Below are positions 21,501 to 54,987 of a DNA stretch of 64,000 bases, piece by piece. A program made the translations under genes and the position numbers. Position 1 is the stretch's first letter. Each line of letters begins with the position of its first letter. The notes beneath the pieces were generated by a model. It was not told the origin of the DNA. It saw only the letters and a list, made by a program, of their open reading frames with translations, and made no database searches. The stretch lies in IMG/VR virus record IMGVR_UViG_3300035670_000008, positions 152,564 to 216,563 of that record, one strand, 5' to 3'.

Positions 21501-21593
21501 AGCTATAGAGGACTTAACTTCCAGTATTCCTGTGCGTCTTTAGTCCACTTAGGAAGTAACGAATGGTTATTGGCGGGAGACCTTAAAGCGTAG
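18573..21593 (+). CDS. Collagen-like tail fibre protein
   Basis: Multiple Gly-X-Y runs separated by repeated globular modules: WRxGxxxP...GVDxDYY...TGDV (x4) and [13 protein letters not shown]...DDST..KG (x3). Confidence 0.85.
19392..19478 (+). repeat. Tandem 9/18-bp repeats encoding GIQGEQ collagen triplets
   Basis: Repeated GGTATACAAGGTGAGCAG units; a related GGTATCCAAGGGGAGCAG repeat lies at about 18747-18795. Confidence 0.85.
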
Positions 21594-21596
21594 ACT

Positions 21597-22520: not shown

Positions 22521-22525
22521 TTATT

Positions 22526-23332
22526 ATGACTGTATCTCCGATTGTTATACTAGGTGACCAATTTACAGGGAGTGGCTCCGACGACACCACCCAAAGCTTC
22601 CGTAAGTATAATAGCCATATACACTCCGTCGTCCGGGTGCCAGACTTTTTAGCCTACGACGTGGCTTTAGGAGATGAGGTATACCTCTATGATGTTAACG
22701 ACAGATTAGTTGTAGATGAGATTACCGCCCCCACAATTAGTTATCTATCTTCGTCGGAGCTGCGCATCTCAACGACGTTTAATCAGTCGTTGTCTAACAC
22801 GGTTCTTTATGTTAAAGCGCCTAAGGAAGAACCTCAGAATGCTGTGTTAATCACCGGAGTTGATATTGAGCAAGGCTCGAATCTAATTCGATTTAACCCC
22901 GCGTCAGCTAATGGTTTTGCCAGCACTGCACAGATAATCAGTCTATCCACCGACCAACACAACCACGTTTTTGCTATTCCTTCTGGTGTTGTGAATTATG
23001 AATATCCAGTGGTCTTTCCTTCTGCCAACAAGAGCTGGGTTAAGTCTTTATCTATCTCGCTTCACCATGGCACAGGTACTTTCCATTTGATAGCTAAGCG
23101 AGGAAGCACGGAACAGATACTAGCTAACATTGGAATCAACGACCCAGGCATTGTTTATAAGACCGACCTAACTGAGGACGAAATAGCTGACTCCTCTTTG
23201 GTATACCCTTCTGGATTGATGACAAAGGCCTTAGACGCCGATACTTATCTGAATTTCAAGGTTATTAGGACTGAACCTACCATGAGCTATGTTGTAGTTA
23301 GCATGTCCTTGGAAATACAGAAAGTAATATAA
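22526..23332 (+). CDS. Hypothetical virion-module protein
   Basis: 268-aa beta-rich ORF in the operon. Confidence 0.6.
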   Translation: MTVSPIVILGDQFTGSGSDDTTQSFRKYNSHIHSVVRVPDFLAYDVALGDEVYLYDVNDRLVVDEITAPTISYLSSSELRISTTFNQSLSNTVLYVKAPKEEPQNAVLITGVDIEQGSNLIRFNPASANGFASTAQIISLSTDQHNHVFAIPSGVVNYEYPVVFPSANKSWVKSLSISLHHGTGTFHLIAKRGSTEQILANIGINDPGIVYKTDLTEDEIADSSLVYPSGLMTKALDADTYLNFKVIRTEPTMSYVVVSMSLEIQKVI

Positions 23333-25114: not shown

Positions 25115-25150
25115 CCACTAGGTTAGAGGTAGCTACCTCAGTACTAGACT

Positions 25151-25807
25151 ATGCCTAACGAGTCCAACCCTTATAGCCCTATACTACCGCCGCCGCAACC
25201 AAGTATTTGGCCTGCTACCTCTGAGGCTGAGATTCTTCAGACTGTCGAGACTCGATTAACCTATACACCGATTATTGTTCAGTTTGTACCCCCAATTCTT
25301 GACGCTGACAGTTCACCTTATACGGACAAACAACGTAAGCGTCGCTACGCCCTTAGAATTACTACGCCACCTAGCAACCGACCAGGAGAGTGGCAGTATA
25401 TCCCTGACAGCTACTACTATGAAATCCCAGAGGACGGGCTGCTTAGATTGCAGCTGGTGCCTTCCGACCGGTATCTACCAATCGGGCGTTACGTTGTAGA
25501 ATACTTCCGTATAGGTAAGCGGCTGCCCGTGTTGACCCAGCGGTGGATTGTTCCGAAGCCGCCGCCACTAGGCACCTTTGCATTTAACTACGAACTTCAA
25601 CCACCGGTGTTACCAATAGATGTCTGGAAAGTCACTAGCGTCTCCGCAGGTACGGAGTGGGTATCTAACTACAATTCCCTGACTTGGGGTACACCTCCTG
25701 CTGTAGGAGAAGTTGTTAATGTCAAATATCAGCGAGCTCTCACTTTAGATAAACTTATAGACTACGGTATCAATAACTTTAAAGAAACGGATCGGGTGCG
25801 CTATTAA
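25151..25807 (+). CDS. Hypothetical Pro-rich protein
   Basis: 218-aa ORF ending 2 nt before the giant gene. Confidence 0.65.
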   Translation: MPNESNPYSPILPPPQPSIWPATSEAEILQTVETRLTYTPIIVQFVPPILDADSSPYTDKQRKRRYALRITTPPSNRPGEWQYIPDSYYYEIPEDGLLRLQLVPSDRYLPIGRYVVEYFRIGKRLPVLTQRWIVPKPPPLGTFAFNYELQPPVLPIDVWKVTSVSAGTEWVSNYNSLTWGTPPAVGEVVNVKYQRALTLDKLIDYGINNFKETDRVRY

Positions 25808-25809
25808 AC

Positions 25810-28800
25810 ATGGCTATCGATTACATCGACGCGGTTGGCGGTAGACTCTCTGTTAAGCTTGAGAGCTCGCACCTAAACGAGTCTGCCGGTAATATGTCTA
25901 TCGGCGGTCAAGTCGAGCGCACTAAGGAAGACCCGTATGGTGTCGTTTCCTACATGCACGATACGAACAGGCTGGCTCGCTTTGTAGACGGCCTGCGGGA
26001 TATTGAAGTCATTCAGTTCGCAGCTCCGTTCAACAACATCCAACGTTCCGTTAGCCCCTCCCCAAATCCTTTAAGCAATATGCTGGAGGGGGCATACAAC
26101 AGCGCGAAATGGATGCAGGCACTGTTCCCTTCAGAAGTCAGTATGTTAATGAAGACTAAACAACTGAAGTCTTTGGAGACTGACCTCACTAACTTTGACA
26201 GTACTGTCCAGAATCCTATTAAACTATACGAAGCGAGAGAAGCATTACTTAACAACCAGATTCAAGCCAAGTACCATAAGAACAAGGATGGATCTTTCCC
26301 GGAAGTTACCGGGGCACAACTAGACCGTCTGCAGCACTCGAAGTTGTTAGAAGGTTTATACTCTAAGGAGAAACAAGCCCAACTACAAGCGGAGTTCAAA
26401 GAAAAAGGGTTTAACGTACAGGCCCCTACTGGAAAAGTACAAACAACCACAGCAATGTTTACCGATACCTCCTTTCTAGGGATATCGATTACAGGTTCTG
26501 GTGGAGCTTTAGGTAGCTACGAAGACTACACCTTAGGGTTTGAGAATCCGAATATCATTCGAGACTTAGCCTACTTTAGAGAAAACAAATCGACCATTGA
26601 TTACTACGAGCGAGAGCCCGTCCCCGGCGTTACGATTACAGGTAACCTCTCTATTTATAAGAAGCGGGTTGAAGCTTTAAGAGAAGCTAATGAGATTCAG
26701 CGCATCTTGGGGAAAGGTAAAGATGGATTGTTTGTCTACGTCGCCTCCCCTTCTATGGACTGGAATGAGCAACCACGGGAGCATAACTACCGGGACACTA
26801 TCCAGAGGAAGAACGTAGGTGCCTACATTAAGGAGCTGCAGAAAACTGGAACCCAGGGCATCTTAAGTTTAGGGATTGACAAGAAGCGGATTAACATCCC
26901 TGCTGGAGAGAAGACTAAACTTCTACAGAACGCTTACATTGGTGACTCTAGGTCTGGCCGGCGAGACCACGGAAACATGCAGTATATTAACTTGCGAGGT
27001 ACACCGAAAGACCGGATTAGCAAAGAGGCTCAAGAGGAGCTAGCCCGTAAAGGTCTACTGGACAAGGCGGTCAAAGGTATCTCTACTTTATCCATCGGAC
27101 AGTACCGGATTGTTGGGGACGAGTCGATTAACCAAGAGACGACCATCGATTTAAACAAAGTTAGTCCCGCGTATAGGGAGGCAGCAGAAGGTATTGCTCA
27201 AGGCAGCATCGGCGGGAAGAACTTCTACCAACTTAGGAAGGACGTAGCTAAGGAAGGTATTGCCGGCGCGCTGCTCCAAGAGTTTTACACTCCTACGTTT
27301 AGCGACCGGCAGAAGCGGGGCTGGGAGCAAGAAGGGTTGCTACCTAATATGCCGCTGTCTATGCCCGCCTCGTTCTTTAGATACTTCGAGCCGGGAACCA
27401 AAACCCGTATCTACACAGACCGCTTTAAAGCGCTAACCGGTTACCGCCCAGAAGGTGCTCAGGGCTACGTTCTTCGTACTTTAGATGAAAAACTTAGCGA
27501 CCCTGGGTTGGGCAACCAAATCAACTATATGTTCCGCCAGCGGGACTTGTACGAGGTGGGTAAAGGCGCGGTAGGAACATTAGCCGCGGGTGTAGGCCGG
27601 TTTATAGACACAGCCACTGGCTTCTACACTATGCAGACTATTAAGGCTCGGGAGTCTGGGCAACTTAGCGGCTCGTTACGCAAGCTGTATGAATCTAGAC
27701 AGCGAGACCCTTATGAACAGACTGAGAAGAGAGGCTTTTTCGAGAATCTTACTACTAAAGCTGTGGCTATCACTGGCTCTACTGCTACAGCTATGGCGTC
27801 TTACTTTGGGGTGACTCATGCTTATACGATGGCAAAAGCGGCGGTAGAGCAGGTTGGTGTGGACTATGTGCTTGACTCCATCGCCTCCGGGAAGGTCGGC
27901 GGAGCCAGTAAGTTATTTCTAGAACAACTCTTGGATGAATCTCATAGTAATTTGATTACCGGAGCTAACATCATTTATAACGCGGAGTCCGGTGCCCTCC
28001 GCACTATTGAGAACACAGGGAAGGCACTAGACGAGTACTTTGACTTGTCGACTCGGTCTAGTCTAAAAGCGCTTCAATTAGACGACGAGCTGGTCGATGA
28101 AGTCGTTAAGGAGTCTGATTTCATTGGTGGGATTAGAGGAAAAGGGATAGCCGCGCCGACGGAGCAGCAAGCTGTGCTTAATCTCATTGGCGAGCTAGAC
28201 ACCTCTGCCGCAGCTAGAGATAACACCGTAGCCGGGTTGGTTACTAAGAAACTAGAAGCTCGGTTAGCTGAGTTTGCTAAGAGACCTGGCACTGCGACTG
28301 GGGCGAAGCCACCAGCAGGTGAAATCAGGGGTTGGGTAACCGAAATCTATAAAGAGCTAGGAATCCACCGCGATGCTGGAACTATTGACTTAGGGCGTGG
28401 GGTAGACCACCCAACCATTGCCGCTAGAGTCCAGCAACCAGCGGGCTTCGTCAACATCGCCTCTGTCCGCCGTATGGATACTGGCAACCTCCATAATATG
28501 TTTATCCCTCTTCTGGACGAGGTTGTATTTGACAAAAATAACCAGCAGTACCGAACAGCAAAAGAGAACTTACTCCGGCTGGCTAAGGCCTCACCGATAC
28601 TGTCTTATAAACAAACCGCAAATAACTTATCAGCTGCTTCTGACCTTAAAATCTACAACTACGGCTACGAACGTATCCGACAACTAGCCGAGGTGTTTGA
28701 CGAACTAGCAGAACAACTCCCGGCTAACCCGTTGATGTGGATTAAGCCTATTCGTCAAGTCTTCATGGCTAATCCACTAACTGGAGGTCAAACCCGACAC

Positions 28801-37800: not shown

Positions 37801-40800
37801 CACGCGATAGCTGCGACTTTAGGAATTGGACAGACGGCGACCAAGCTATTCATGGGCGGTAATGTCAACGCGGCTTCCTCTATTAATGCTTCGGTAGAGG
37901 GCGCGGTATCCTTCCTTGGAATTAAAGCAGTCATCAACCGAGCGATTGGTAAGCGTCGGTTTGATAACGTCGTACTGAACCGGTCTACTAGAGATGACGG
38001 GAGAGTTCTAGATTCAGAGCCCGTGGCTAACGTCGTTAAACAATCAGCAGGCCCGACTGGCTCGAAGAGTAGCTTCGAGGATGATTACTTAACCAACCCA
38101 TATATGTTGGAAGCCGGCGCTACGATTGGTGCCTACGCGCTTATCACTTTGGGTTCTAGTTACCTGGCGGCTAGAGCTACGAAGAAGGCAGCCTCTATTG
38201 CTTTAAACAAAGCCAAGCAACTGCTAGAAGAAAGGAAGCTCGCGGCTGAGCCTTCTGTTACGACGACAGCGGCGGAGCCAGCTGTTGCTGAGCCGTCTCC
38301 TTTGGCGTCTCCCGAACCCGCGGTTAGCGCAGATACCTCGGCTAAGGGAGTTTCTACAGTAATGGACTTATATGAGGAGACCGCTCCAAGTCCCCTTGCC
38401 TCAGCTGAACCACCAGTCGGTAAGCCTAGTTACAGCGCGGACACCTCAGGACAGGGTGTGTCGGCTGTGCTTGACCTGTATGAGTCTATTACTCCACAGA
38501 CTCCTGCTCCAGAGACAGTAGCTAAACCGATCGTTACTGCAGAGCCGCCGTCTACTTCTAGTCAGGACGTTATTAATAAGGTGACTAATCCCGAGCCGCC
38601 TACTCCTACACCAACTGTTACAGCTCCTCCATCTCCTGAACCGACAGGGCCTAGTAAGCTTGAGTCACGCAAACCACGCTTTGGTCAAATTGACCCTAAC
38701 TTAAAAGGTAATATATCAACTGGTAAGAAGCAGGCATTAACCGCCGGTAAATTCCTGTTAGGGACTTCAACTGATGACCATCTATCTAGTAGTCTTGTTT
38801 CATTGAATAGAGCTATTAACCAAGTTCAAAATGCTGGCTTTGCTAGTTTAGGCCCTGCAGGAGCCAGTCGTTACGGACAGTTAATGGGTGAGCGGCAGGC
38901 TATCTTATTGGAGCAGCGCCGTCGGCAGCAACAAGCTAGCCAACAGGTCATTGAAACTGTTGCTGCCGAACCAGAGATTACACCTAAACCTTTAGAGCAG
39001 CCTGCTCCGCCGCAGCCGACCAAGCCTATTCCTACTACTCCTAAAGAGCCAACTGTCGAGCCATCTTTGTTGGACACGACTAAAGCAGCTGACTATTTAC
39101 CAGTACCTATCTATGAATCGTTTACTGACACATCTTTCTTAAGTAGAACTTCTGGTAAACAAACTACTTTAGGCAGACAGAAGTTCCTTATGGCGGGTGG
39201 GTACATGAGTACGAATAGTTACTCTAATGTACCGGAGTTAGAGCGGGCTGGCGGAAAGGATAGTGCTGATATTAATAAAGGTGACCTAAGTATTAGAGTT
39301 AGTATAAAGGCACAGACTGTAAAAGACGGTAAACGTGTTGATATAGACAATCCTTATATCAACATACAACATATATGGAATATAGCCAACGATGAATACG
39401 GACGGGGTGGGGTCATTACCCGTGACTACATATTAGAAATAAACTCTTTTCCTGGGGCAACGGTAGAAGAGAAAGCTAAAAGTGCTTACGCTTACTTCGA
39501 GCAGCAGTACGCGCGCCGGATGCAGGAACTTCGTAGCTCCAATCCAGCAGCTATCGATAAATACATGGCGGATGCCGGCCACGGCGATTATCTTTCTTGG
39601 GATTATAACAACCGGCAGGGTGATGAAGGGTTCTTGTTTAAACATGAAATTAATCCTACAGGAGCAGTTGGTAAAGTTACACCTCCGGTAGAAAACCCTA
39701 CTCTACCTAAACCCCCACAACCACAACCAACAAAAACGTCGGATAGGACGGCATTACTAAATATATATGAAACATCCACTAGTGGTGTAGAAGGTTCTGG
39801 TAGTAGAGATTACGATTATACTCTCCCACGCGGTTATGGGATTACGTATGGTAATAAACCTAGTGGACTAGACAAGGACAAGTTTGTTGAACGTTTAGAT
39901 GTAGATTTTAAAGAAAGAGAAGGTGGTTATAGAAAAATAGACCTTTTAGGAACTAAGGTTGAGGCTAGAACTGCGGCTTTAGCATTAAAACCTATGGAGG
40001 TGTTTAATACTTCTGGTATTTACACACAAACCAAAAATGGTAAACAGCTTAAAGTTGCTTATGTCTCTACTATGTTAGGGATGGCTTCTGATGTCAGCGA
40101 AAAGGACGCTCGGAAGATGGTTTATCATAGGGATTATTTTGCTGAAATCAAGCCCGAACAAGATGAGCAAGTTGTTTTACGGCAACTGCAAGCTCAATAT
40201 GTTGAAGCAGTTGAGTGGGCTAAGATTAACGCTCCTGACCAAATTAAAGATGGGCATCTAGTCCCACGTCCTGAAGGGAAATTTGTTCCTATTGATTTAA
40301 GTAATGTAGGAGGTTTGCATACTACAATCCCACAGCAAGATGGTGGTTTCATCAAACCTGTTCCGTTACCAACTAGTGCGGAGCGTCAGGTCTTAAGTCA
40401 ACAGCGCGCCGACCGGGTGCGCCGTGGGCAAGCTAAAGGCATTGATTACCAAATGATGCTGATGGACATGGTCTATGGCAAGGCTAAAGAAAGTGTCACC
40501 GGCGTCATTAGCAAAGCTAAGGAGATTAGTCAATCCTTCGTATCTGGAGTCGGTCGAGCCGTCCGGGGTACAGCTAACCAAGCCTGGGACGGTTGGAGTA
40601 TCTTCGACCGATTAGAAGGCCTCGACGCTCGCTTTGGCAACCAAGGTATGGGTGGTGGGGCTGGATTCTGGACTCGCTTTGGTCAAAGCGCTAAGTACGA
40701 ACTTAGCGGCAGGGGGATCGTTGAAGGGGGTTTTGGTATCGGTCGAAATGCTCAAACCGGCAAGGTTGGTATCCAAGGTAAAGGCGGCGCGATGGCCCTT

Positions 40801-43800
40801 GCTGGCATGGGGCTACAACTAGCTGACGATATCCTGACGTTAGACTGGAGCCGCAAGAACTTTGCTAAGTCGTTAGGTACGGTAGCGAAGAATCAAGCCA
40901 CGTCGTTAGCTGCTGGGGTAGCCTTCGGGTTGGTGACAGCTGGGCTGGGGGCCCTAGCGTTGTCTTCTGTACCGGCGTTAGCTGCGCTGGGGATTGTGGG
41001 TAGCGCTGTGTTGATGGGCTATGGAATCTACTCGCTAGCTGACCAAGGCTTCAAGGTTGGTGGTAAAGCCTGGGAGAAATTCGTCCTGAAGCGGAAGCGC
41101 ACAGCAGAAGAGCAGAAGGTTTACGAGCAACAGAGCCAAGTTCTATCGATGGGCTTTGGAGTTGGGACTTTTGTTTACGCAGGCTACAACCAAATTAAGA
41201 GTCTTCAGGGCGCCCGTCGGGCGGCTAGCGTAGTCAACCAAGCACCGGTCGTTCCGACTGTTCCCGTTCGCCAGGCAGTAGATGTAATAGACGACGTAGC
41301 TCCGAGAACTCCTGTCAACCCAACTAGAAGCGGGTCGGTGCTGAAGACCGCGGGTAAAGCCGTCAAGGTAGCCAGCACAATGTACAGTGTCTATCAGATT
41401 GGTACCGGGCTACACCAAGCTTTCACTGGTAAGACTGAACAAGCAAAAGACCAAGGTCGTCGTCAAGCCGTTCGGGAAATCGGTGGATTGATTGGGATGC
41501 GAGCTGGTGCCAAGGTCGGGGGCTACGTCGGTCGTGCTGGCGGCACGGCTGTGACAGCTAACCCCACCGGGGCTATCGTTGGTGACGTCGCTGGCCAAGC
41601 GGTCGGTGGATATATTGGCTACCAAGGCGGCTCTAACATCGCTGAGCAGATGTACGACAACGCGATGGAGATGATGTATGGCAAGATGAACCAACGCCAG
41701 CGTCAAGAGGCAGTTGATAAGGAAGTCAAGCGCCGCTCAGCTGGCAGTCAATATAACTTGGAGGCTATCCAAGGTAAAGAACAGAAGGTCGCTAAACAGA
41801 TAGAACGCCCGCGGGCTTGGTGGCGGTCGGACGAGGAAGATACTCCCTGGTGGAAGAAACTACTGCAAACCATTGGCAAGGGTGTAGAAGCGTTAGGTAA
41901 CTTTCTAACTAGGACTAAGAACGCTGCCTTAGACGCTGCTGATGCTTTAAGTAATTGGGCAACAGGCGGCGTTCCACTTAGTTCTGACGCTTTAATCAGT
42001 GGTAATTTAAGAGCGGCTAACAGTCGGGGTACATCTATTATCCAGGCTGCTCAAATATTAGGCATTAATCCCTTAGACTTGGCCACTATTGTTGAATTTG
42101 AGTCAGACGGAAACCCCCATATTCGGGGAGGGGCTGGCGGTAACTATATTGGGTTGATACAGTTTGGACCTAACGAACGTAAGAAATATGGTTATCACTC
42201 CAAGATGACTTTTGAAGAGCAAATGTTAGGGCCCGTCGTTAACTACTTTAAAGACCGCTTTAAATCGGCTGGGATGTCGACGGAAGGGGCTTCGTTAGAG
42301 GATTTATATACCACAGTGTTAGCAGGTAATCCTAAGGCTAACCGAGGTTCTAGGGATGCTTTTGGTACTAGTCCGCGCTCAGGTGTTCGTAAGATGACGG
42401 CTCCGGGGGCCGACCGGGATATCGCTCTACAGAAGTACTTTATTGTTGATGGTACACTTAACGCCCCTACAGGGTTCCAAGTTCCTAGTGGTGCTCGTTG
42501 GGCTAGTTCGATGGGCGTAAGAGATGCCAAGACATTGGCTCAATTACCTCAACGAACGGGAGGTAATGCTTATGGAATGAGAATTCATCCTACTCAAGGT
42601 AGACGTAAACTTCACGCTGGGGAAGACTACGCATTTCCGATTGGAACTCCGTTATCGACAGCGACGCCGGCTGTGGTTGTGTTTGCTGGTATGTTAGGTA
42701 ATGCAGGCAACACTGTTGTTCTTAGACACTCAAACGGCACCTACACTCGTTCGTTACACATGGATAAGATTTCGGTCAAGGCAGGTGACGTCTTGATGCC
42801 CAACCAAATGTACGGCACGGTTGGCACTACTGGGGATTCAACAGGCCCTCACCTCCACTTTGAGGAAGGGTCGTGGGATAGTAAAACCAATAGGTTTAAA
42901 GCCAAGCCCCCAACTGACTTAGGCCGTAAGTCAATTCAGGTTGGAGGTAAAACAGTTAAGGTTCAGGCAACACCGCCGACTAGCCCACAGGATTACTTCA
43001 ACAAGGTTGCTCCTATTCAGTCTGGTCAAACCCAATCTCAACAGATTATTACCCGTACTGAGCGGAAGTCTACTAAAGTAGGCGGGGTTACTCACTATGC
43101 CTACACCAACACCACCCAGAAGCTAGTGACAATAGCTGACAGTCAAGTGATCGGTAAGCAAAAACAACAGCTGAACGAAACAACAGCTAAACAAGTCAAT
43201 AAGATGCTAGCTGAGTTGAAGGCTGCAACCGGCGTTGACCTTTGGATCCTCTCTGGATATCGCAGCGTTGAGTATCAGCAAGAGCTATGGAATAAGAAGA
43301 AAAGAGAAGGTAAGAGCGACGCGGTTATTGCTAAGTCATTAGCTATACCTGGCTTTAGTGAACACCATACTGGAGACGCTTTTGATATTTCGCTGCAGGG
43401 CCAAGCGAACCTAACTGCTGAGCAGTGGGCCAGTAATCCAAAGTTAAGGGAAGCGCGCGCTTGGTTAGATAAGAACCAATCTAAGTACGGATTTGAAACT
43501 TCTTTCTTACCAGGCAATAAAGAGAACGTTGTGTCTGAGCCTTGGCATTTACGGTATGTAGGCCCTGGCTCTGAGTACGCCCGTCAAATCAAAACTAACG
43601 TAACGACGAGTCAGCAGGTTATTAATCAAGTCCAAGGCGGAACGACCACCCAGCAGGTTGCGTTAAACCAACAGCAACTCACCCAAGGTATTGAAGCCAT
43701 CCGTAAAAAATACGGTCTACAGTCTATCTATGCCCAAACTAAAGGTGGGGTAACTGTAGGTACAGTTGATAAGAATAAACCAGCGGTGGTTTCTAGCGCT

Positions 43801-46641
43801 TCAATGGGTAAACTTCCCATTGCTTTGTTGGTTCCATTGGTGAATCAACGGCTTAAGTCGGGTGGTCAAGAACTTGATCGATTGATTAAGATCGACACTA
43901 AGTTGGTGTATGAACATGATGGAGTTCGTTCGGACAACGAGCTAGCCAAACTGACCGTCAAGAGAGGCTATACTTCTATCCGTCGGTTGACCCAGACGAT
44001 GTTAAAAGATTCCAGCAACACCGCCGCTAACATTTTAATTAAGGAAGTGTTGGGTGGGGATAAAGCGGCGACGCAGCTAGCTAAGCAGTACTACAAAGAT
44101 AACCAAATACAGATTGGTTACTACGGTGGTGACACTCGTAAGCGGATGGGCGGTACGTCAGCGGCTAAAGCCACCACCAAGTCTTTGTTCCAAGCTTGGA
44201 CAGAAATTCGACGGGGTAAAGGTGCTTACTTTGATGTAGCTAACCAAGCGCTGTCTGACCCTGGTCGTTTTAAACTACTAGGCGATACTTCCACAGCGTC
44301 TAAGATTGGAGTTACTTCCTCGGTATTAGGTAACGCCGGGACTTACTCCGGTGGTGAAATTTTAGTCTTTGACTTCGGCAGTAATAAAGACCACCGTGAC
44401 CCTAATAATCAGCGTCGTTTAGCTCAGGCAGCAGCTGAGGTCAACGCTTTGTTGGGTAAACGAACGACGGTGCAAGTAGCCAATCCATCTGCCCAGTATC
44501 AACAACAGCAGGCTCAACGGAATGTTAGCTACATTCCAGGGGTTGGCGCGGGTCGGTCGAGAATTGTAACCAGCCCCGCAAGTGGTGTAGTTACTAATAG
44601 AAATGACCCGGACAGCCGCGAGTTCGTAACGGGGAGTGATATTCAAATAGGCGGTATCCGTAACGGCGTGCCAATTTGGAATCCCATCCAAGGATTGACC
44701 CAGGTTAAGCCTAATAGCTTCCAAGGTCGAGGCAGAGGTAGAAGCGGAAAAGGTTGGGGTAACTTGACTCGCTACCGGATTGACTTAGGTAACAACCGAG
44801 TCGTAGAGATGTTGCTCGGTCACGGTGATCGCCCCTTTGAGGATTATATGGGTCAAGGCGGTATTGTACCATTCGCCTTACTTGGTTACCAAGGGGATAC
44901 AGGGCACGCAACAGGACCCCACGCTACTACTTCTTATAAACCGGTTAAGGGAACTAACGCGACTGCGGCTGACGCAAGATTAGTTGAACGCATGGTTCAG
45001 AATGCGTGGACCAGTAGAGGGTCTTGGGTTCGTGTCAACGGCGAGTGGCGTTTGGTTAAGTTGAACCAGGCCCAGCAGATGGGGTTACTTAATGGTACTC
45101 AACCTTCAGTTCAACCAAGTCAAACGGTTAAACCCCAACCAGTTAGTCAACCTGCTCGTAGCCAACAACAACTCAAGCAATCGTACCAACCTGCTGGTGA
45201 CTTCAAGCGAGTCAAAGCTAGTTACTACGGCGGTACCCAATTCCATGGTAAGCGAACGGCTTCAGGGGAAATCTACAACCAAAACGCGTTGACGGTAGCG
45301 GTTCCCCGGGATAAGCGGAATAGACCCATCATACCGTTTGGAACCGTCTTAGAAGTTATTAACCCAGCTAATGGCAAACGAGTCTTAGTTAAGGTTACTG
45401 ATACTGGTTCGTTTGGCAGTATGGGAAGAGGGTTAGACTTAAGCGTAGCCGCGGCTACAGCACTAGGTACGATTAAAGCTGGGGTGGCTAATGTTCAGTA
45501 TCGGATTGTCAAGCCTGTGGCTAACGCTAAACCACAAGAGCCAAAACTAGAGCTGCCTACTACTAAACCAAGTGATTGGGCTCCTCTTGTACCAAAGGCT
45601 GCGCCGCCGCCTGCTCCCAAACCTAAACCCAAGTTCAATATCTTTGACCCTAGAACCTGGCTAAGAAGCGAAGGGGTAAGACCTCAACAGACTTCTAACC
45701 CCGTAGCTACGATTAAATCTCCTGTCATAGAGGAACAGCAAAAAGGGGGTGATAACATGGTTCCTAGACAACGAATGGAGCCGGTGCTGGTCGCTGGGGA
45801 TTTATCTAAGCTTTCTGGTATTTTGCCTCCGGCAGATAAACTGCCTACGGCTAGTAACGTCTGGGGGATGCCTGGTCATCGGCCTGCGCCGACGGGTAAC
45901 TATCATGACTACGGCAAGCGCCCGCCGCAAAGAGAGGGCCCCATTTGGGGTCAGGCTGGTAGCAGACCGGAGCAGACCGGTAGCTACCAAGATTGGGAGC
46001 GGATACCCCAGCGTGACCGGACTACGCCGCCAGTACCTACGGTGCCGGGGCATCGTCCAGAGATATGGGATATTCTTCCCCCATTGGGGAATATTCCTGG
46101 AACGGTGGATATTCGTAACCCTAAAGCTAAGCCGACGATTCCGCCCAGTGAATGGGGAGTCGTTAAACCTAAGGCAAAGCCGAAAGTAAAAGCGACCCCC
46201 ACGCCTAGCCCGGCTCGTATTGAAGTGCCTATCGGAATGCCCAAAGCGGTGCTTGGACTAGCCGGTGTGCTAGCTAACGCAGTCGGGAAGAACTTTAACG
46301 CCGAGTTGGTGACGGAAGCCCAGGAGCTTTTGAATGATGCGGCGCAGGCAGCTGTGAGTTATGTAGAGCAAATTAAGGAGGCTAAGGCGGCGGCGATTCT
46401 TTCTTTAGAGCACCCACAGACGTTAGCTGGAGTTCGTCCGAGTAATCAACGTGGGCAGGAGGTTCGCACTAAGAAACAAGAGATAGTTGCTAGCTACGAA
46501 GACGGGAAGATTTATATTGGTCAGCAGATTCCTACTGAAGCAGTGCAGGCTCAGTTAGCCAACCGGGATATTAAGGTTCCGGTTCGTCCCGAGCACGAGC
46601 GAGCTGCCGCTCCACGGATGATGAATACGAAAGCAGACTAG
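25810..46641 (+). CDS. Giant (6943 aa) tape-measure-like/ejection protein with six C-terminal cell-wall-enzyme domains
   Basis: Uninterrupted ORF; long Ala/Gly-rich helical region with hydrophobic segments; C-terminal lysozyme-like, M23, VanY/M15B, beta-lactamase-like, second M23 and RlpA-DPBB motifs. Confidence 0.8.
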   Translation: MAIDYIDAVGGRLSVKLESSHLNESAGNMSIGGQVERTKEDPYGVVSYMHDTNRLARFVDGLRDIEVIQFAAPFNNIQRSVSPSPNPLSNMLEGAYNSAKWMQALFPSEVSMLMKTKQLKSLETDLTNFDSTVQNPIKLYEAREALLNNQIQAKYHKNKDGSFPEVTGAQLDRLQHSKLLEGLYSKEKQAQLQAEFKEKGFNVQAPTGKVQTTTAMFTDTSFLGISITGSGGALGSYEDYTLGFENPNIIRDLAYFRENKSTIDYYEREPVPGVTITGNLSIYKKRVEALREANEIQRILGKGKDGLFVYVASPSMDWNEQPREHNYRDTIQRKNVGAYIKELQKTGTQGILSLGIDKKRINIPAGEKTKLLQNAYIGDSRSGRRDHGNMQYINLRGTPKDRISKEAQEELARKGLLDKAVKGISTLSIGQYRIVGDESINQETTIDLNKVSPAYREAAEGIAQGSIGGKNFYQLRKDVAKEGIAGALLQEFYTPTFSDRQKRGWEQEGLLPNMPLSMPASFFRYFEPGTKTRIYTDRFKALTGYRPEGAQGYVLRTLDEKLSDPGLGNQINYMFRQRDLYEVGKGAVGTLAAGVGRFIDTATGFYTMQTIKARESGQLSGSLRKLYESRQRDPYEQTEKRGFFENLTTKAVAITGSTATAMASYFGVTHAYTMAKAAVEQVGVDYVLDSIASGKVGGASKLFLEQLLDESHSNLITGANIIYNAESGALRTIENTGKALDEYFDLSTRSSLKALQLDDELVDEVVKESDFIGGIRGKGIAAPTEQQAVLNLIGELDTSAAARDNTVAGLVTKKLEARLAEFAKRPGTATGAKPPAGEIRGWVTEIYKELGIHRDAGTIDLGRGVDHPTIAARVQQPAGFVNIASVRRMDTGNLHNMFIPLLDEVVFDKNNQQYRTAKENLLRLAKASPILSYKQTANNLSAASDLKIYNYGYERIRQLAEVFDELAEQLPANPLMWIKPIRQVFMANPLTGGQTRHSIEGGAETTLRYTFKDLIGPGFTGLINLQGQITRELVNINKVGLGKHLEGGFDLIKQSKELVQSQSQLVAIIQQSNSAQQAVEMLEGFNIGGNLTELGARKEFIRKQSRYDVLLRDRRRDYEELLKQEGGNPAFSGLRKGLLGIGTVLLVDRLFDTFVMRPQGVDLFDSILSDVIGSRSPAVEGREGDAAFQSLYDTEYSNALPNIVKYPSAAAGFFIGGHMFPSYEVAESSIYTAMRSKYGELGEAALSGTKFTLQAEGDRAIALGINKQIIKTKFGTAGALLGASAALIGSQLLANYVADVAKPAVRGFDNLASLATGVFTGQWGRWREPESGLDVDPVKGSAASVLAKLVHYSVRGQAKGYRKGGLVTAEQKTDTYLLGLTAQSMMQSDSKPPQLFYSFATQIASPFFQFASVGKVDPAKNTINLNAGLQLFPLLGAGLMLPSPLTPKVTYTSALPTRMVANYLKKYHEGVRYRYEPNTLGEIQEREAFHRMEEINKLSSMMLGGGVNLSLDTKPLVYLAMLGGLRDLSESSLAAFEQMQVNNRDLSPDKATKLYKELSNYETLFHAGRTGFNVLDTMSRAAYSLPMVMPNYLVKSATTLLGGAGRTQHILGPMARRASPYLLAFGILGASFRFNDKAMESELVTYADLQKLFKTGQYEGLNQKLIESQGINLTQTVIGSALLGAAISSSGAFESVRNFGAAYDRVQKITEQGGRAGYIDRQKHKLYSMWMEHLAEKGTVGLPLESGVDLVIESINTPSKASEAYEQISRRLVEPAEATLQTRLRDRQLIEAAREIDIPLVRTMPTRLGMLARRVAPLVVGAMVVSQMLATTDGFKQSPWMSLIRNLTDTGAGDLSAEQRAMLTKLGIKEPKYRPKDLGQSFRNIADYLVGAAMTPFGGNTFGLYQDNPNPFSPILGPLGVSLGSQDDVRPYLQSQSVAADISGSLYLLPAMSAGISEAMNLGPLLKYAGQLETHPKGSQIARALIRGAGLRTRAAKFKGGPSQREMRAASSPELQMALVRRYDRLRQLSWQTAGEHQWDVLAEFHRAGRILGNNQRGTIPGAEMNATRPATTMIYDTLGKLHLIPVLNDGTFITPRKNTETELLKFFRNLMSSGAGYGQGAAADFSADVTDTLIRRSQDRGGVPVLSFFSGLFQYAFNSFYDKNTEEIAADSNNVIGAGLMAGAAIALGASFVGTTFATGIQLVGALAALSDQGNISDVRSSIRDLRQGVKKRLRRSTFYIDQTNDRLVRPDGHNRIRALKDHNLTDEAVEQINQALTGQGRYGGYSPGNALETIIDADLRTTASKLVNTYHTGGGQTISTTVVEEVDALIKSLDTQLTVVVGGQQIHVGDLLTPTVAAEGATEAVVAHSVVKDKARLSTEIYEVLTSGKFKDTQQLEIERILLDHIDRGLAVTTADGRFEAAQATPNAYQPEAAVRAEQQAAAKKAAEQGVQTVEAYDPSVGYLRSKIQAKGYSGLMAEGAAGAMRAAGELINLKAYYEILSYTAAMGSSDVFDRRRSTQAAAQNTIQAFGMIIPMQYALKAAQASPGVAITAALTAAVIGGAALGNKQVRDTLGNIFKPVFSFGDKYVYKPAVQGLAGIYDAVTTAAPFIPQVLRPIAAVFDPIFSNMRSAAGNDPALSMLANFFVPEGVEQFYQRNAEIKGRTTPWGEAQEFYSNKELGQYYLSKMASRRRRGRSINAGIDSDLLHPFMQGKQVDIQYMNIFADRYLGGDGRIMEQFQTDRQMSNLLLMAIQRRQGMIDQYAEGSYMRKPYTKENVHHYFSTALALSKFSYAQTGSFIEAPINQAARGIGTTLGALQYVSELIPSEVGTKIKQGTVGAGIGFMVGAQLSHLGKDEGERRQYAAIGGSVGATVGGAGSVILAPSAQHLARRAFVALKKDKTVRAIAGGVATGAKYLTKQAGNALGMAGRWLNKAAPYLTFGALTTAAVYTNYDFLANLVDGDDRHKKGPLYNPLLKMGVSAGVGATTTLLGFTAVLGKNSNILASRLGKATGGVFRAGGKGANVLLLTGLTNFLLTNNVTGALPKTALRSAYTALNIGREEDFENYYSSGAAAASLVTGVVTPPVTNWIHGNYKRQLTGLLTPELNTIGPASAIPVDESQRAMALVTKLQGDLDFVEGRTSMKPVNTTAKMARLLGIAEDAVVQTNLEEEYLNVLSNKQLALRHARSLVDANLQHGFIHEGLRSIRAVARVSGHIGTLGLGYFLKGLSSSNSVPLSVLAMIMGGLGGFGYQHVNAKTANDRSWVNYMGAGLAGGYAAGTAAGLVTSFGSGNLPSVPLSKYPQRLMNLFARIVKAIDKGDVDDAISTKALPKWLDDIQGFSQKLLQDPRSAGLSESVNLKSVGTKVDWFKLSNKVLPVAAFSIDVLNLYTSVNQINNLQYGRSQAQFQQAYSSYQSTISTIAFSALMGIAARNTSFSRILGGTLQAGQLGYKRGLDESDNAYADAMVDNVAYQTSKRKQTMLALGAGGLSALSVSISALRANPSFAQRVLPKSLVALGSRPLAQSAAQQIDDFGMPVVQTAFTAYGLHRVAKPYEQRYEHSSNVSYQMAQRRGELMSLVLFATGSALLARKPSTKLGAAVTKYIPGLGAIGAGALKDLYTKDSFYQYEAMFLKSGITNDYAKNIIATKAAESTDDNLGITLGLTTLASIGLLVATKGKYKGPILAAPAVVASGLGYYNYSSTIHGEINERKQYEETGGLKPEEVAEYQEWRSSGELYPSRWKNTRQGVNYQKYKEAERRRITNFNLNYNAPVRRGYGFTPAPVDAKSIPDFVLRAAAMESHAKAIENHKANPVVLGASAAGLGLATWIVGTSRIPTLNVIPAAGKHYLSSWKTAVPFGTHVGTNLIEPVITGVAIAAEQRKINDLSKVPISVGIAGEMQAVRQSVDITTAQDKMTFLALMSQLPLSGETTLGSIVRGGLVHGIGHAIFESNIGMVREREFKQRVKVLAEARAKGVKVNSALLSKAVKAQATTDEGHAIAATLGIGQTATKLFMGGNVNAASSINASVEGAVSFLGIKAVINRAIGKRRFDNVVLNRSTRDDGRVLDSEPVANVVKQSAGPTGSKSSFEDDYLTNPYMLEAGATIGAYALITLGSSYLAARATKKAASIALNKAKQLLEERKLAAEPSVTTTAAEPAVAEPSPLASPEPAVSADTSAKGVSTVMDLYEETAPSPLASAEPPVGKPSYSADTSGQGVSAVLDLYESITPQTPAPETVAKPIVTAEPPSTSSQDVINKVTNPEPPTPTPTVTAPPSPEPTGPSKLESRKPRFGQIDPNLKGNISTGKKQALTAGKFLLGTSTDDHLSSSLVSLNRAINQVQNAGFASLGPAGASRYGQLMGERQAILLEQRRRQQQASQQVIETVAAEPEITPKPLEQPAPPQPTKPIPTTPKEPTVEPSLLDTTKAADYLPVPIYESFTDTSFLSRTSGKQTTLGRQKFLMAGGYMSTNSYSNVPELERAGGKDSADINKGDLSIRVSIKAQTVKDGKRVDIDNPYINIQHIWNIANDEYGRGGVITRDYILEINSFPGATVEEKAKSAYAYFEQQYARRMQELRSSNPAAIDKYMADAGHGDYLSWDYNNRQGDEGFLFKHEINPTGAVGKVTPPVENPTLPKPPQPQPTKTSDRTALLNIYETSTSGVEGSGSRDYDYTLPRGYGITYGNKPSGLDKDKFVERLDVDFKEREGGYRKIDLLGTKVEARTAALALKPMEVFNTSGIYTQTKNGKQLKVAYVSTMLGMASDVSEKDARKMVYHRDYFAEIKPEQDEQVVLRQLQAQYVEAVEWAKINAPDQIKDGHLVPRPEGKFVPIDLSNVGGLHTTIPQQDGGFIKPVPLPTSAERQVLSQQRADRVRRGQAKGIDYQMMLMDMVYGKAKESVTGVISKAKEISQSFVSGVGRAVRGTANQAWDGWSIFDRLEGLDARFGNQGMGGGAGFWTRFGQSAKYELSGRGIVEGGFGIGRNAQTGKVGIQGKGGAMALAGMGLQLADDILTLDWSRKNFAKSLGTVAKNQATSLAAGVAFGLVTAGLGALALSSVPALAALGIVGSAVLMGYGIYSLADQGFKVGGKAWEKFVLKRKRTAEEQKVYEQQSQVLSMGFGVGTFVYAGYNQIKSLQGARRAASVVNQAPVVPTVPVRQAVDVIDDVAPRTPVNPTRSGSVLKTAGKAVKVASTMYSVYQIGTGLHQAFTGKTEQAKDQGRRQAVREIGGLIGMRAGAKVGGYVGRAGGTAVTANPTGAIVGDVAGQAVGGYIGYQGGSNIAEQMYDNAMEMMYGKMNQRQRQEAVDKEVKRRSAGSQYNLEAIQGKEQKVAKQIERPRAWWRSDEEDTPWWKKLLQTIGKGVEALGNFLTRTKNAALDAADALSNWATGGVPLSSDALISGNLRAANSRGTSIIQAAQILGINPLDLATIVEFESDGNPHIRGGAGGNYIGLIQFGPNERKKYGYHSKMTFEEQMLGPVVNYFKDRFKSAGMSTEGASLEDLYTTVLAGNPKANRGSRDAFGTSPRSGVRKMTAPGADRDIALQKYFIVDGTLNAPTGFQVPSGARWASSMGVRDAKTLAQLPQRTGGNAYGMRIHPTQGRRKLHAGEDYAFPIGTPLSTATPAVVVFAGMLGNAGNTVVLRHSNGTYTRSLHMDKISVKAGDVLMPNQMYGTVGTTGDSTGPHLHFEEGSWDSKTNRFKAKPPTDLGRKSIQVGGKTVKVQATPPTSPQDYFNKVAPIQSGQTQSQQIITRTERKSTKVGGVTHYAYTNTTQKLVTIADSQVIGKQKQQLNETTAKQVNKMLAELKAATGVDLWILSGYRSVEYQQELWNKKKREGKSDAVIAKSLAIPGFSEHHTGDAFDISLQGQANLTAEQWASNPKLREARAWLDKNQSKYGFETSFLPGNKENVVSEPWHLRYVGPGSEYARQIKTNVTTSQQVINQVQGGTTTQQVALNQQQLTQGIEAIRKKYGLQSIYAQTKGGVTVGTVDKNKPAVVSSASMGKLPIALLVPLVNQRLKSGGQELDRLIKIDTKLVYEHDGVRSDNELAKLTVKRGYTSIRRLTQTMLKDSSNTAANILIKEVLGGDKAATQLAKQYYKDNQIQIGYYGGDTRKRMGGTSAAKATTKSLFQAWTEIRRGKGAYFDVANQALSDPGRFKLLGDTSTASKIGVTSSVLGNAGTYSGGEILVFDFGSNKDHRDPNNQRRLAQAAAEVNALLGKRTTVQVANPSAQYQQQQAQRNVSYIPGVGAGRSRIVTSPASGVVTNRNDPDSREFVTGSDIQIGGIRNGVPIWNPIQGLTQVKPNSFQGRGRGRSGKGWGNLTRYRIDLGNNRVVEMLLGHGDRPFEDYMGQGGIVPFALLGYQGDTGHATGPHATTSYKPVKGTNATAADARLVERMVQNAWTSRGSWVRVNGEWRLVKLNQAQQMGLLNGTQPSVQPSQTVKPQPVSQPARSQQQLKQSYQPAGDFKRVKASYYGGTQFHGKRTASGEIYNQNALTVAVPRDKRNRPIIPFGTVLEVINPANGKRVLVKVTDTGSFGSMGRGLDLSVAAATALGTIKAGVANVQYRIVKPVANAKPQEPKLELPTTKPSDWAPLVPKAAPPPAPKPKPKFNIFDPRTWLRSEGVRPQQTSNPVATIKSPVIEEQQKGGDNMVPRQRMEPVLVAGDLSKLSGILPPADKLPTASNVWGMPGHRPAPTGNYHDYGKRPPQREGPIWGQAGSRPEQTGSYQDWERIPQRDRTTPPVPTVPGHRPEIWDILPPLGNIPGTVDIRNPKAKPTIPPSEWGVVKPKAKPKVKATPTPSPARIEVPIGMPKAVLGLAGVLANAVGKNFNAELVTEAQELLNDAAQAAVSYVEQIKEAKAAAILSLEHPQTLAGVRPSNQRGQEVRTKKQEIVASYEDGKIYIGQQIPTEAVQAQLANRDIKVPVRPEHERAAAPRMMNTKAD
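42030..42430 (+). other. Lysozyme-like/lytic transglycosylase domain in the giant protein
   Basis: AAQILGINPLDLATIVEFES...YIGLIQFG...LEDLYTTVLAGNP (catalytic ES and GLxQ motifs). Confidence 0.7.
42560..42890 (+). other. Peptidase M23 domain in the giant protein
   Basis: GMRIHP...HAGED (HxxxD)...GNTVVLRH...LHM...STGPHLHFE (HxH). Confidence 0.9.
43150..43570 (+). other. VanY-like (M15B) D-Ala-D-Ala carboxypeptidase domain in the giant protein
   Basis: SGYRS..YQ, PGFSEHHTGDAFD (SxHxxGxAxD), EPWHLRYVG (ExxH). Confidence 0.9.
43700..44460 (+). other. Class A beta-lactamase-like/serine D,D-peptidase domain in the giant protein
   Basis: ASMGK (SxxK), DSSNTAAN (SxN), SKIG (KTG-like), in the correct order and spacing. 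Confidence 0.75.
44560..44960 (+). other. Second, divergent M23-like domain in the giant protein
   Basis: GSDI...GWGN...LLGH...LLGYQGDTGHATGPHAT; the first Zn-binding His and the last His appear substituted. Confidence 0.6.
45200..45510 (+). other. RlpA-like double-psi beta-barrel lytic transglycosylase domain in the giant protein
   Basis: ASYYG..FHGKRTASGE.YNQNALT.A...PFGT.LEV.N..NGK.VLVKVTDTG...RGLDLS.AAA..LG. Confidence 0.9.
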
Positions 46642-54910: not shown

Positions 54911-54911
54911 G

Positions 54912-54987
54912 TGGTACAGGGTACAGGAGTTGAACCTGTCTAAGCGGAATTATGAGTTCCGTGCCTAAACCGCTCGGCCAACCCTGC
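54912..54987 (-). tRNA. tRNA with CAU anticodon (probably Ile2/lysidine type, otherwise elongator Met)
   Basis: GCAGGGU/ACCCUGU acceptor stem, anticodon arm CGGAA-CUCAUAA-UUCCG, T-loop GUUCAAC, encoded CCA; lacks the initiator GGG/CCC anticodon stem. Confidence 0.9.

What the first reader, a model, noticed from the sequence alone, without database searches (positions are those of the whole stretch)
25810..46641. A 6943-aa single ORF, placed after terminase rather than after the tube
Seen: a 20.8-kb uninterrupted ORF; about 4100 aa of helical Ala/Gly-rich sequence with many hydrophobic, glycine-zipper-like segments; then Pro-rich linkers and enzymes. Known: tape-measure proteins set tail length at roughly 0.15 nm per residue. 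Inference: either a tail of about 0.6-1 micrometre, or an ejected channel-forming or core protein that is not a simple ruler. Its position away from the tube gene leaves both open.
Basis: partly seen in the sequence, partly recalled or inferred. Interest (0 to 1): 0.65.

Follow-up and report, generated by a model that had tools for sequence, protein, structure and literature searches.

The report
Giant ejected cell-envelope-breaching phage protein
The 6943-residue gene is real and belongs to a previously undescribed family of giant proteins in contractile-tailed phages; it most likely leaves the virion at infection to cut through the cell wall and membrane, and it is not a simple tail-length ruler.

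Summary
The ORF (window 25810-46641, +, 6943 aa, 751 kDa) is real. It is the last gene of the late operon of a 216.6-kb contractile-tailed phage from subsurface metagenomes.

An exhaustive profile search found 39 cluster representatives, nearly all 2.2-7.9 kaa. Microcystis phage Ma-LMM01 gp120 (2898 aa) and a 4151-aa Microcoleus phage protein are members too. All examined loci keep the order TerL, a roughly 200-300-aa partner, the giant gene, then a strand switch; the Microcoleus record has one extra small ORF.

The family shares a helical N-terminal core of about 2,200 aa with no known fold. Relatives carry PLD-like or SNase domains in front of it. Length variation lies after the core. In this protein that part holds:
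- hydrophobic Gly-rich segments
- a transmembrane hairpin
- five cell-wall enzyme domains (SLT, M23, VanY, class-A-fold, RlpA-like)

MaMV-DH01 has a 2899-aa homolog but a 230-260 nm tail (0.08-0.09 nm/aa), so the 0.15 nm/aa ruler fails.

Best reading (0.5): a multifunctional tape-measure equivalent housed in the tail lumen, like P23-45 gp96 or T5 Pb2. Main rival (0.3): a capsid-packed ejection protein. Virion location is untested.

The parts
25810..46641 (+). Giant ORF, 6943 aa, 750.6 kDa, pI 9.5 (P0001)
   Evidence: full-length homologs
23333..25114 (+). Large terminase subunit, first gene of the conserved trio
   Evidence: phrog_17415; 32% identity to Ma-LMM01 gp118; the trio is seen
25151..25807 (+). 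218-aa Pro-rich partner ORF that ends 2 nt before the giant's ATG. Conserved next to the giant gene. Function unknown.
   Evidence: 53% and 40% identity to the ORFs in the same position in L010 and L007; no family hit
25810..27300 (+). Pre-core N-terminal region (aa 1-497). Relatives carry PLD-like or SNase domains here. In this protein aa 277-481 aligns only weakly to the PLD-like domain and the HxK motif is not kept.
   Evidence: hhalign probability 10%, E 3e-3; no Pfam hit
27301..34206 (+). Family-defining N-core (aa 498-2799): conserved, largely helical, no known fold
   Evidence: AF2 of aa 490-1460: pLDDT 75.9, pTM 0.68. Fold searches negative.
34207..38199 (+). Weakly conserved region (aa 2800-4130) rich in uncharged Gly/Ala/Ser hydrophobic segments. 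Absent from the 2.9-kaa relatives.
   Evidence: not folded
38200..40332 (+). Pro/Ser/Thr-rich linkers and two domains of unknown fold (aa about 4400-4600 and 4620-4840), variable among homologs
   Evidence: no Pfam or PDB hit
40333..41709 (+). Gly-rich block (aa 4842-5300) holding a 50-aa uncharged transmembrane hairpin (aa 5028-5077, nt 40891-41040). It is 93% identical to P0002.
   Evidence: a comparable hairpin precedes M23 in Ma-LMM01 gp120
42022..42321 (+). Lytic transglycosylase (SLT/goose-lysozyme type) domain with an EFES motif
   Evidence: Pfam SLT E 0.0037, below cut-off. Profile against PDB: 9udh lytic transglycosidase E 4.9e-18 and 9k2v phage 'Internal protein' E 6e-10.
42610..42864 (+). 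M23 zinc endopeptidase; HxxxD and HxH motifs present on reading the sequence
   Evidence: Pfam E 4e-20; PDB ShyA and lysostaphin; NCBIfam
43165..43563 (+). VanY/LdcB-type D-Ala-D-Ala or LD-carboxypeptidase
   Evidence: Pfam E 1.2e-30
43765..44217 (+). Class-A beta-lactamase/DD-peptidase-fold domain (SxxK and SDN visible). Not a resistance beta-lactamase by score.
   Evidence: Pfam Beta-lactamase2 E 6.3e-8; NCBIfam bla_class_A 27.9 bits against a cut-off of 200
44494..45084 (+). Conserved domain of unknown fold (aa 6229-6425), 91% identical to P0002
   Evidence: no PDB match
45211..45501 (+). RlpA-like double-psi beta-barrel (lytic transglycosylase type)
   Evidence: Pfam DPBB_1 E 5.7e-13; TIGR00413 rlpA; the same domain occurs in a solved phage 'hub' chain, 8kea
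45730..46641 (+). Pro-rich stretch and C-terminal domain (aa 6641-6943), conserved only in the closest homologs

Best explanation
The protein is carried in the virion and expelled at infection to open the cell envelope. Most likely it is this phage lineage's tape-measure equivalent: it sits inside the tail tube and leaves it when the sheath contracts.

**Shown**
- It is a real, conserved gene at the end of the late structural operon.
- It has a conserved helical core of about 2,200 aa.
- It has a transmembrane hairpin.
- It has a C-terminal array of peptidoglycan enzymes aimed at both glycan strands and peptide cross-links.

**Inferred**
- The C-terminal end lies at the tail tip and exits first.
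- The enzymes digest the wall.
- The hydrophobic segments enter the cytoplasmic membrane and form or line the DNA conduit.
- The N-terminal end follows last. In relatives this end carries PLD-like or SNase domains.
- Tail length is not set at 0.15 nm per residue over the whole chain. Either the constant core sets a tail of Ma-LMM01 type (about 230-260 nm), or the whole chain packs at about 0.085 nm/aa and the tail is about 0.55-0.6 micrometre.
For: **The phage has a contractile tail and no other tape measure was found.**
- Contractile-tail genes are present: sheath, Baseplate_J and a gp25-like protein.
- No other tape-measure candidate was recognised in the 96%-complete genome or in complete Ma-LMM01. 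PHROG, Pfam and NCBIfam scans gave none. PF10145 and PF20155 are absent from both genomes.
- The 1111-aa ORF behind the tube is mixed alpha/beta with conserved beta domains. Its only lead is a GpP-like hub.

**The architecture parallels a proven giant tape measure.**
- Here the transmembrane hairpin is followed by SLT, M23, VanY, a class-A-fold domain and an RlpA-like domain.
- PLD-like or SNase domains sit ahead of the core in at least 28 of 39 relatives.

**Other support.**
- The M23 region also matches phrog_10030, a 2105-aa tape-measure family with a C-terminal M23.
- Volume check: a trimer of the 317-kDa homolog fills 35-40% of a 4-nm lumen over 230-260 nm. That is at the top of the range I computed for T4 gp29 and lambda gpH, 0.18-0.39 (T4 and lambda sizes are from my own knowledge).
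- A tightly abutting, conserved partner ORF sits upstream, as with chaperone and tape-measure pairs.
Against: - The gene is not in the tail module. Across the family it stays linked to TerL, while the tail genes of Ma-LMM01 and this phage show no detectable similarity.
- The folded 971 aa form a compact multi-helix body (pTM 0.68, longest helix 50 aa), not an extended coiled coil.
- The sequence is rich in invariant Pro, Gly and aromatic residues.
- It has no repeats.
- It gives no tape-measure profile hit.
- In MaMV-DH01 the ratio is 0.08-0.09 nm/aa.
- Three copies of 751 kDa need at least 217 nm of lumen at 100% fill and about 540 nm at 40%.
- Folded enzyme domains would not fit the lumen.
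- Virion presence is untested.
Confidence: 0.5

Rival explanations
1. It is a capsid-packed ejection protein, comparable to an ejectosome or internal virion protein or to a polyvalent protein. It would be loaded into the head, pass unfolded through the tail ahead of or with the DNA, refold into a trans-envelope conduit, digest the wall and deliver its N-terminal domain. A separate tape measure, not yet recognised, would set tail length.
For: - Linkage to TerL is conserved, not linkage to tail genes.
- The core is compact and folded.
- The size of the variable part is free, 1.3-5.1 kaa. A capsid tolerates that easily and a tube lumen does not.
- The layout is a multi-enzyme 'polyvalent' one. 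Polyvalent proteins are described as injected with the DNA (PMC7824862, citing Iyer 2017).
- The SLT profile matches a solved phage 'Internal protein', 9k2v, at E 6e-10.
- The weak BFVD list includes internal virion proteins (lead only).
Against: - It needs another tape measure, and none was found in two genomes.
- There is no MuF or other known head-anchor domain.
- Known contractile-tailed phages place wall enzymes at the tail tip or on the tape measure (my own knowledge).
- The fold matches are far below significance (TM <= 0.1).
Confidence: 0.3
2. It is a classical tape measure that acts as a ruler over its full length at about 0.15 nm/aa, giving a contractile tail of about 1 micrometre.
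For: - Precedent: P23-45/P74-26, with a 5,002-aa tape measure and a tail of nearly 1 micrometre.
- No other tape measure was found.
Against: - The homolog-versus-tail test fails in MaMV-DH01: 435 nm predicted, 230-260 nm seen.
- Length variation lies outside the conserved core.
- About 1,200 aa are globular enzymes.
- The fold is compact.
- There are no repeats.
Confidence: 0.05
3. It is not a virion component. It would be, for example, a giant lysis or cell-wall-remodelling protein made late in infection, or a baseplate-external enzyme carrier.
For: - PHROG labels the Ma-LMM01 gp120 family (phrog_6700) 'endolysin'.
- All recognisable domains act on peptidoglycan.
Against: - A conserved 2,200-aa core, a transmembrane hairpin and N-terminal nuclease-type domains are unnecessary for lysis.
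- The gene closes the structural operon and is translationally coupled to its neighbour.
- No signal peptide is evident at the N-terminus on reading the sequence.
Confidence: 0.1

Closest known systems
Microcystis phage Ma-LMM01 gp120 and MaMV-DH01 ORF143 (phrog_6700; annotated hypothetical protein or 'endolysin')
   Same: True homologs.
- A family N2-core profile built without gp120 hits it at E 4.8e-21.
- The cores are collinear: aa 98-2412 against 96-2315, hhalign probability 98.6%.
- Both have the TerL, partner, giant synteny.
- Both have a transmembrane hairpin followed by M23.
   Different: - They are 2.4 times shorter.
- They lack the 1,300-aa hydrophobic region, the linker domains and four of the five enzymes.
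- No function has been shown for them either.
Thermus phage P23-45 gp96, a 5,002-aa tape measure fused to a virion RNA polymerase (PMC10770324)
   Same: - A giant protein with an N-terminal folded module.
- Transmembrane segments and a metallopeptidase further down the chain.
- Proposed to be injected and to form the DNA pore.
   Different: - It belongs to a siphovirus.
- Its gene is annotated as the tape measure.
- Its length fits the tail of nearly 1 micrometre.
- Here there is no sequence similarity and no DxDxD motif.
Phage T5 Pb2 and mycobacteriophage tape measures with muralytic motifs (my own knowledge)
   Same: One chain combines lumen occupancy, hydrophobic membrane-active segments and a C-terminal M23-type wall enzyme.
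   Different: - They are about 1,100-1,700 aa.
- They carry one or two enzyme motifs.
- The gene sits next to the tube and chaperone genes.
- They are rulers at about 0.15 nm/aa.
phiKZ gp181 (2,237 aa, virion lytic transglycosylase of a contractile-tailed jumbo phage; my own knowledge)
   Same: - A very long protein in a myovirus with a C-terminal lytic transglycosylase.
- The ratio of length to tail is also well below 0.15 nm/aa.
   Different: - No similarity was tested or seen.
- It has a single enzyme domain.
T7 gp14/15/16-type internal virion proteins and the polyvalent proteins of Iyer et al. 2017
   Same: - Helical proteins ejected through the tail that carry an SLT domain or arrays of enzymes.
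- The SLT profile here matches a solved phage 'Internal protein'.
   Different: - Those belong to podoviruses, or carry MuF anchors.
- No MuF domain is present here.
- The SLT domain here is C-terminal, not N-terminal.

Membership tests
Tape measure protein (functional class) | Gene lies between the tube or chaperone genes and the baseplate hub | tested here: not met
   It lies 21 kb downstream of the tube, after the fibres, TerL and a 218-aa ORF.
Tape measure protein (functional class) | Preceded by assembly-chaperone genes with a programmed frameshift | tested here: inconclusive
   A conserved, abutting 218-aa ORF is present. It has no chaperone family hit. No frameshift site was searched for.
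Tape measure protein (functional class) | Extended alpha-helical or coiled-coil chain, often with tandem repeats | tested here: not met
   Aa 490-1460 is 58% helix in 37 mostly short helices, with pTM 0.68. No DNA tandem repeats and no internal protein repeats. Aa 2800-4130 was not folded.
Tape measure protein (functional class) | Length proportional to tail length at about 0.15 nm/aa | tested here: not met
   MaMV-DH01 has a 2899-aa homolog 98.7% identical to gp120 and a tail of 230-260 nm, which is 0.08-0.09 nm/aa.
Tape measure protein (functional class) | Match to a tape-measure sequence family | tested here: not met
   No Pfam, PHROG or NCBIfam tape-measure hit outside the M23 domain. PF10145 and PF20155 are absent.
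Tape measure protein (functional class) | Hydrophobic or transmembrane segments plus a wall hydrolase, as in multifunctional tape measures | tested here: met
Tape measure protein (functional class) | Located in the tail-tube lumen of the virion | not testable with these tools
   Needs proteomics or cryo-EM.
Ma-LMM01 gp120-like giant proteins (phrog_6700 and relatives) | Conserved N2 core domain and a collinear N-core of about 2,200 aa | tested here: met
Ma-LMM01 gp120-like giant proteins (phrog_6700 and relatives) | Synteny: TerL, a 190-300-aa ORF, the giant gene, then the end of the late operon | tested here: met
Polyvalent proteins (Iyer et al. 2017) | MuF or another known head-anchor domain, with arrays of conflict enzymes | tested here: not met
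   No MuF or related Pfam hit. The enzyme array is present, but it is aimed at peptidoglycan.
Class A beta-lactamase | Score above the family cut-off | tested here: not met
   27.9 bits against a cut-off of 200. Only the fold family (Pfam Beta-lactamase2) is met.

The most novel reading that the evidence does not exclude
These 2.2-7.9-kaa proteins may be a new class of phage injection machine. It would be built on a 2,200-aa helical core with no known fold. It would carry exchangeable heads (PLD-like or SNase) and exchangeable wall-enzyme tails.

It would then be one of two things:
- The largest tape measure known, which predicts a contractile tail of about 0.55-0.6 micrometre. To my knowledge that is longer than any reported.
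- A myovirus ejectosome stored in the capsid, in a lineage whose true tape measure is still unknown.
Probability: 0.25. Interest if true: 0.8.

Novelty: new variant of a known kind. Interest (0 to 1): 0.6.

Why it matters
- **Size.** If it is the tape-measure equivalent, it would be the largest known, at 6,943 aa against 5,002 aa in P23-45.
- **The ruler rule.** It would show that in a whole lineage of contractile-tailed phages, including the bloom-relevant Microcystis phages, the 'ruler' is a modular delivery protein whose length does not translate into tail length by the textbook rule.
- **Annotation.** Ma-LMM01 gp120 has stood as 'hypothetical protein' since 2006. This work gives it a testable role.
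- **Enzyme array.** Five wall-directed domains on one chain, exchanged as cassettes between phages (93% identity against 47% in the core), are a compact natural toolkit for thick or heavily cross-linked cell walls.

Tried and rejected
**Assembly artefact: rejected.** Full-length collinear homologs come from four sources, and contigs are identical in three runs.

**RNA-polymerase fusion as in P23-45: rejected.** P0001 has no DxDxD motif anywhere, and the folded part is all-alpha.

**Identifying the core's fold: led nowhere.**
- PDB sequence profile.
- Foldseek against PDB.
- VIA wide (only helix-hairpin matches, Z <= 7.5).
- BFVD (TM <= 0.1).
- ESM Atlas by shape (TM <= 0.17) and by features (score 0.80, chance level).

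**Direct BLAST to phage records.** DNA and tblastn gave no match. The search for related loci also gave none.

**Deciding whether the 1111-aa ORF behind the tube is the tape measure or the hub: unresolved.**
- AF2 pLDDT 50.
- No Pfam hit in ten homologs.
- No PDB hit.
- VIA gave only helical-bundle matches.
- No similarity to Ma-LMM01 gp105-gp117.
- The 630-aa and 800-aa neighbours also gave nothing.

**Second 'M23-like' domain (aa 6229-6425).** No PDB match, so it is reported as unknown.

**Active PLD-like nuclease in this protein: not supported.** hhalign probability 10%, and HxK is not kept.

**Promoter and terminator scans.** At chance level.

**Literature.** No paper in the library assigns a function to gp120 or reports virion proteomics or cryo-EM for Ma-LMM01-type phages. 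The Ma-LMM01 genome paper was not held.

Full report
**1.

The window has one uninterrupted ORF at 25810-46641 on the + strand, 6943 aa with an ATG start. The protein is 750.6 kDa with pI 9.5.

The window is the last 64 kb of a 216,563-bp virus record rated 96% complete.

The gene is not an assembly artefact.
- The word search found three full-length homologs of 7866, 6860 and 6361 aa from JGI, NCBI and Logan/ENA data.
- They are collinear with it over the first 4,260 aa at 47%, 47% and 36% identity.
- Contigs of 34 kb in three runs of one subsurface/soil study cover 36001-42000 without a single difference. These runs may be the source of the record, so this is only a consistency check.

**2. 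Genomic setting**

The + strand block runs as follows: portal, protease, major head protein (outside the window), sheath (259-3846), probable tube (3919-4686), a 1111-aa ORF, four further ORFs, a gp25-like protein, Baseplate_J (14915-15991), a collagen-like fibre (18573-21593), TerL (23333-25114), a 218-aa ORF (25151-25807), and the giant gene. After that the strand switches to replication-type genes.

So this is a contractile-tailed phage. The giant gene closes its late operon.

TerL is closest (32%) to Microcystis phage Ma-LMM01 gp118. Ma-LMM01 shows the same order: TerL gp118, gp119 (211 aa), gp120 (2898 aa), strand switch.

**3. A family of giant proteins**

No Pfam, PHROG or NCBIfam model matches the first 3,500 aa, so I ran the exhaustive profile search with aa 450-1640 and its three homologs. 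It returned 39 cluster representatives. Apart from a few short sequences of 485-1,863 aa that look like fragments, they are 2,250-7,866 aa long.

Ma-LMM01 gp120 belongs to the family.
- A profile of the best-conserved 190-aa block (aa 498-694), built without gp120, hits gp120 at E 4.8e-21.
- gp120 is 25% identical over about 2,600 aa to two of the representatives.
- A profile-profile comparison aligns aa 98-2412 of this subfamily with 96-2315 of the gp120 subfamily at 98.6% probability.
- The GenBank record of Microcoleus phage My-WqHQDG holds a 4151-aa member behind TerL.

The order TerL, a 190-300-aa ORF, the giant gene, then a strand switch recurs in every locus I could read, with one extra small ORF in the Microcoleus phage record. 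The small upstream ORF is itself conserved, at 53% and 40% identity.

**4. Anatomy**

(a) Pre-core region, aa 1-497.
- At least 23 relatives have a PLD-like domain here with intact HxK and GSxN motifs. Five or six have a staphylococcal-nuclease domain.
- The gp120 subfamily keeps the PLD-like fold without the HxK motif (probability 97.7%).
- This protein aligns only weakly (probability 10%) and also lacks the motif.

(b) The core, aa 498-2799.
- It spans 1,835-2,494 aa in 29 of 30 members. Total length ranges from 3,244 to 7,866 aa, and the part behind the core from 1,336 to 5,097 aa.
- It is dense in invariant Pro, Gly, aromatic and charged residues.
- AlphaFold2 on aa 490-1460 with 33 family sequences gave pLDDT 75.9 and pTM 0.68. 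The model is 58% helix in 37 mostly short helices (longest 50 aa), with a small beta unit at the end.
- No search found a related fold.

(c) Aa 2800-4130.
- This stretch is poorly conserved and holds most of the uncharged Gly/Ala/Ser-rich hydrophobic stretches.
- Over the whole protein there are 29 such stretches of 20 aa or more, against 13.4 +/- 3.1 in shuffles.

(d) Pro-rich linkers and two unknown domains, aa 4131-4841.

(e) A Gly-rich block with a 50-aa transmembrane hairpin at aa 5028-5077.

(f) The enzymes.
- A lytic transglycosylase: profile against PDB E 4.9e-18, and E 6e-10 to a solved phage 'Internal protein'.
- M23.
- VanY/LdcB.
- A class-A-fold serine-peptidase-like domain, which scores far below the beta-lactamase cut-off.
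- A conserved unknown domain.
- An RlpA-like barrel.

(g) A Pro-rich tail and a C-terminal domain shared only with the closest homologs.

The cassettes are mosaic. Aa 4883-5181 is 93% identical to P0002 and aa 4844-5932 is 81% identical to P0003. The core is 47% identical to both.

The ORF has no tandem DNA repeats and no internal protein repeats.

**5. Is it the ruler?**

MaMV-DH01 carries a 2899-aa homolog that is 98.7% identical to gp120. Its contractile tail is given as about 230 nm in the text and 260 nm in the abstract (PMC9927357).
- At 0.15 nm/aa the tail should be 435 nm.
- The observed ratio is 0.08-0.09 nm/aa.
- Together with the constant core, the compact fold and the roughly 1,200 aa of globular enzymes, this rules out a simple whole-length ruler. 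A 1-micrometre tail is unlikely.

A volume estimate gives the following (1.21 cubic angstrom per dalton, 4-nm lumen).
- A trimer of the 317-kDa homolog fills 35-40% of a 230-260 nm tube. That is at the upper edge of what I compute for T4 gp29 and lambda gpH, using sizes from my own knowledge.
- Three copies of this 751-kDa protein need at least 217 nm at full packing and about 540 nm at 40%.
- Scaling by residues or by mass gives 0.55-0.62 micrometre if the whole chain is luminal.
- If only the core occupies the tube, the tail would be of Ma-LMM01 type, and the extra 4,100 aa would have to sit elsewhere.

**6. Tail lumen or capsid?**

For the lumen:
- A contractile tail needs a tape measure, and I found no other candidate in this genome or in complete Ma-LMM01.
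- The 1111-aa ORF behind the tube has conserved beta domains split by variable helical inserts. Its only lead is a GpP-like hub, and its model is poor.

For the capsid:
- The gene travels with TerL rather than with tail genes, which have diverged beyond recognition between this phage and Ma-LMM01.
- The core looks folded.
- The freely varying cargo size is easier to house in a head.
- The multi-enzyme layout recalls the injected polyvalent proteins (PMC7824862).

I rate the lumen model at 0.5, the capsid model at 0.3, the simple ruler at 0.05, and a non-virion role at 0.1.

**7. Mechanism proposed**

These steps are inferred, not shown.
1. On contraction the chain is expelled, C-terminal end first.
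2. The two glycan-cleaving and three peptide-directed domains open the wall.
3. The hairpin and the Gly-rich hydrophobic segments insert into the cytoplasmic membrane and line the DNA path.
4. The core and the N-terminal module arrive last.

In relatives the N-terminal PLD-like or SNase domain may act on nucleic acid or, for PLD, on phospholipid. In this protein that activity seems to have been lost.

**8. Novelty**

Multifunctional tape measures and ejected wall-degrading proteins are known. This family, its core, its size range and its conserved place beside the terminase have not been described in the papers I could search. I file it as a new variant of a known kind.

**9. Limits**
- Only 971 of 6943 aa were folded.
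- The 'helical' claim for aa 2800-4130 is untested.
- The Ma-LMM01 genome paper was not held.
- The host is unknown. The samples are subsurface and soil, while the cultured relatives infect cyanobacteria.

Noticed in passing
window 54794-55116 (-): A permuted (two-piece) tmRNA: Rfam RF04321, 86.8 bits, E 3e-15. tRNA-Trp (54990-55062) and tRNA-Met (54912-54987) are nested in its intervening segment. This is unusual for a phage and may hint at the host lineage.
   Followed up: partly
outside the window: G000:C1:103066-115785 (-) and 126233-141571 (-) (L003, L004): The same genome has two more giant ORFs. One is 4239 aa, with an AAA_33 kinase-like domain at aa 673-798 and a PIF1/AAA_30 helicase at aa 3775-3934. 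The other is 5112 aa, with only a weak PLDc_2 hit. Together the three giants take 48.9 kb, 22.6% of the genome.
   Followed up: partly
window 4757-8092 (+): A 1111-aa ORF sits directly behind the tube. It has conserved beta domains split by three variable helical inserts. The long N-terminus is supported by homologs, although gene callers start it 130 aa later. Whether it is a hub or a tape measure is unresolved.
   Followed up: yes
window 259-3846 (+): The sheath protein is 1195 aa. Only its last 450 aa or so match sheath profiles, and the N-terminal 700 aa are unassigned.
   Followed up: no
window 40456-41352 and 44494-45723 (aa 4883-5181; 6229-6638): These C-terminal blocks are 93% and 78% identical to P0002, and aa 4844-5932 is 81% identical to P0003. 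The core is only 47% identical to both. This points to recent cassette exchange between related phages.
   Followed up: partly
window 18573-21593 (+): A 1006-aa collagen-like (17% Gly) tail fibre that matches many fibre PHROGs.
   Followed up: no
L012 (OR578706.1) 18881-31336; L010 21783-21929: The Microcoleus phage My-WqHQDG record has a 4151-aa family member with a 900-aa extension ahead of its PLD-like domain. A metagenomic relative (L010) carries a weak CP12 hit, a gene typical of cyanophages.
   Followed up: partly
P0032 aa 3079-3200: In one relative the SNase domain lies behind the core rather than at the N-terminus, so the effector modules can change position.
   Followed up: no
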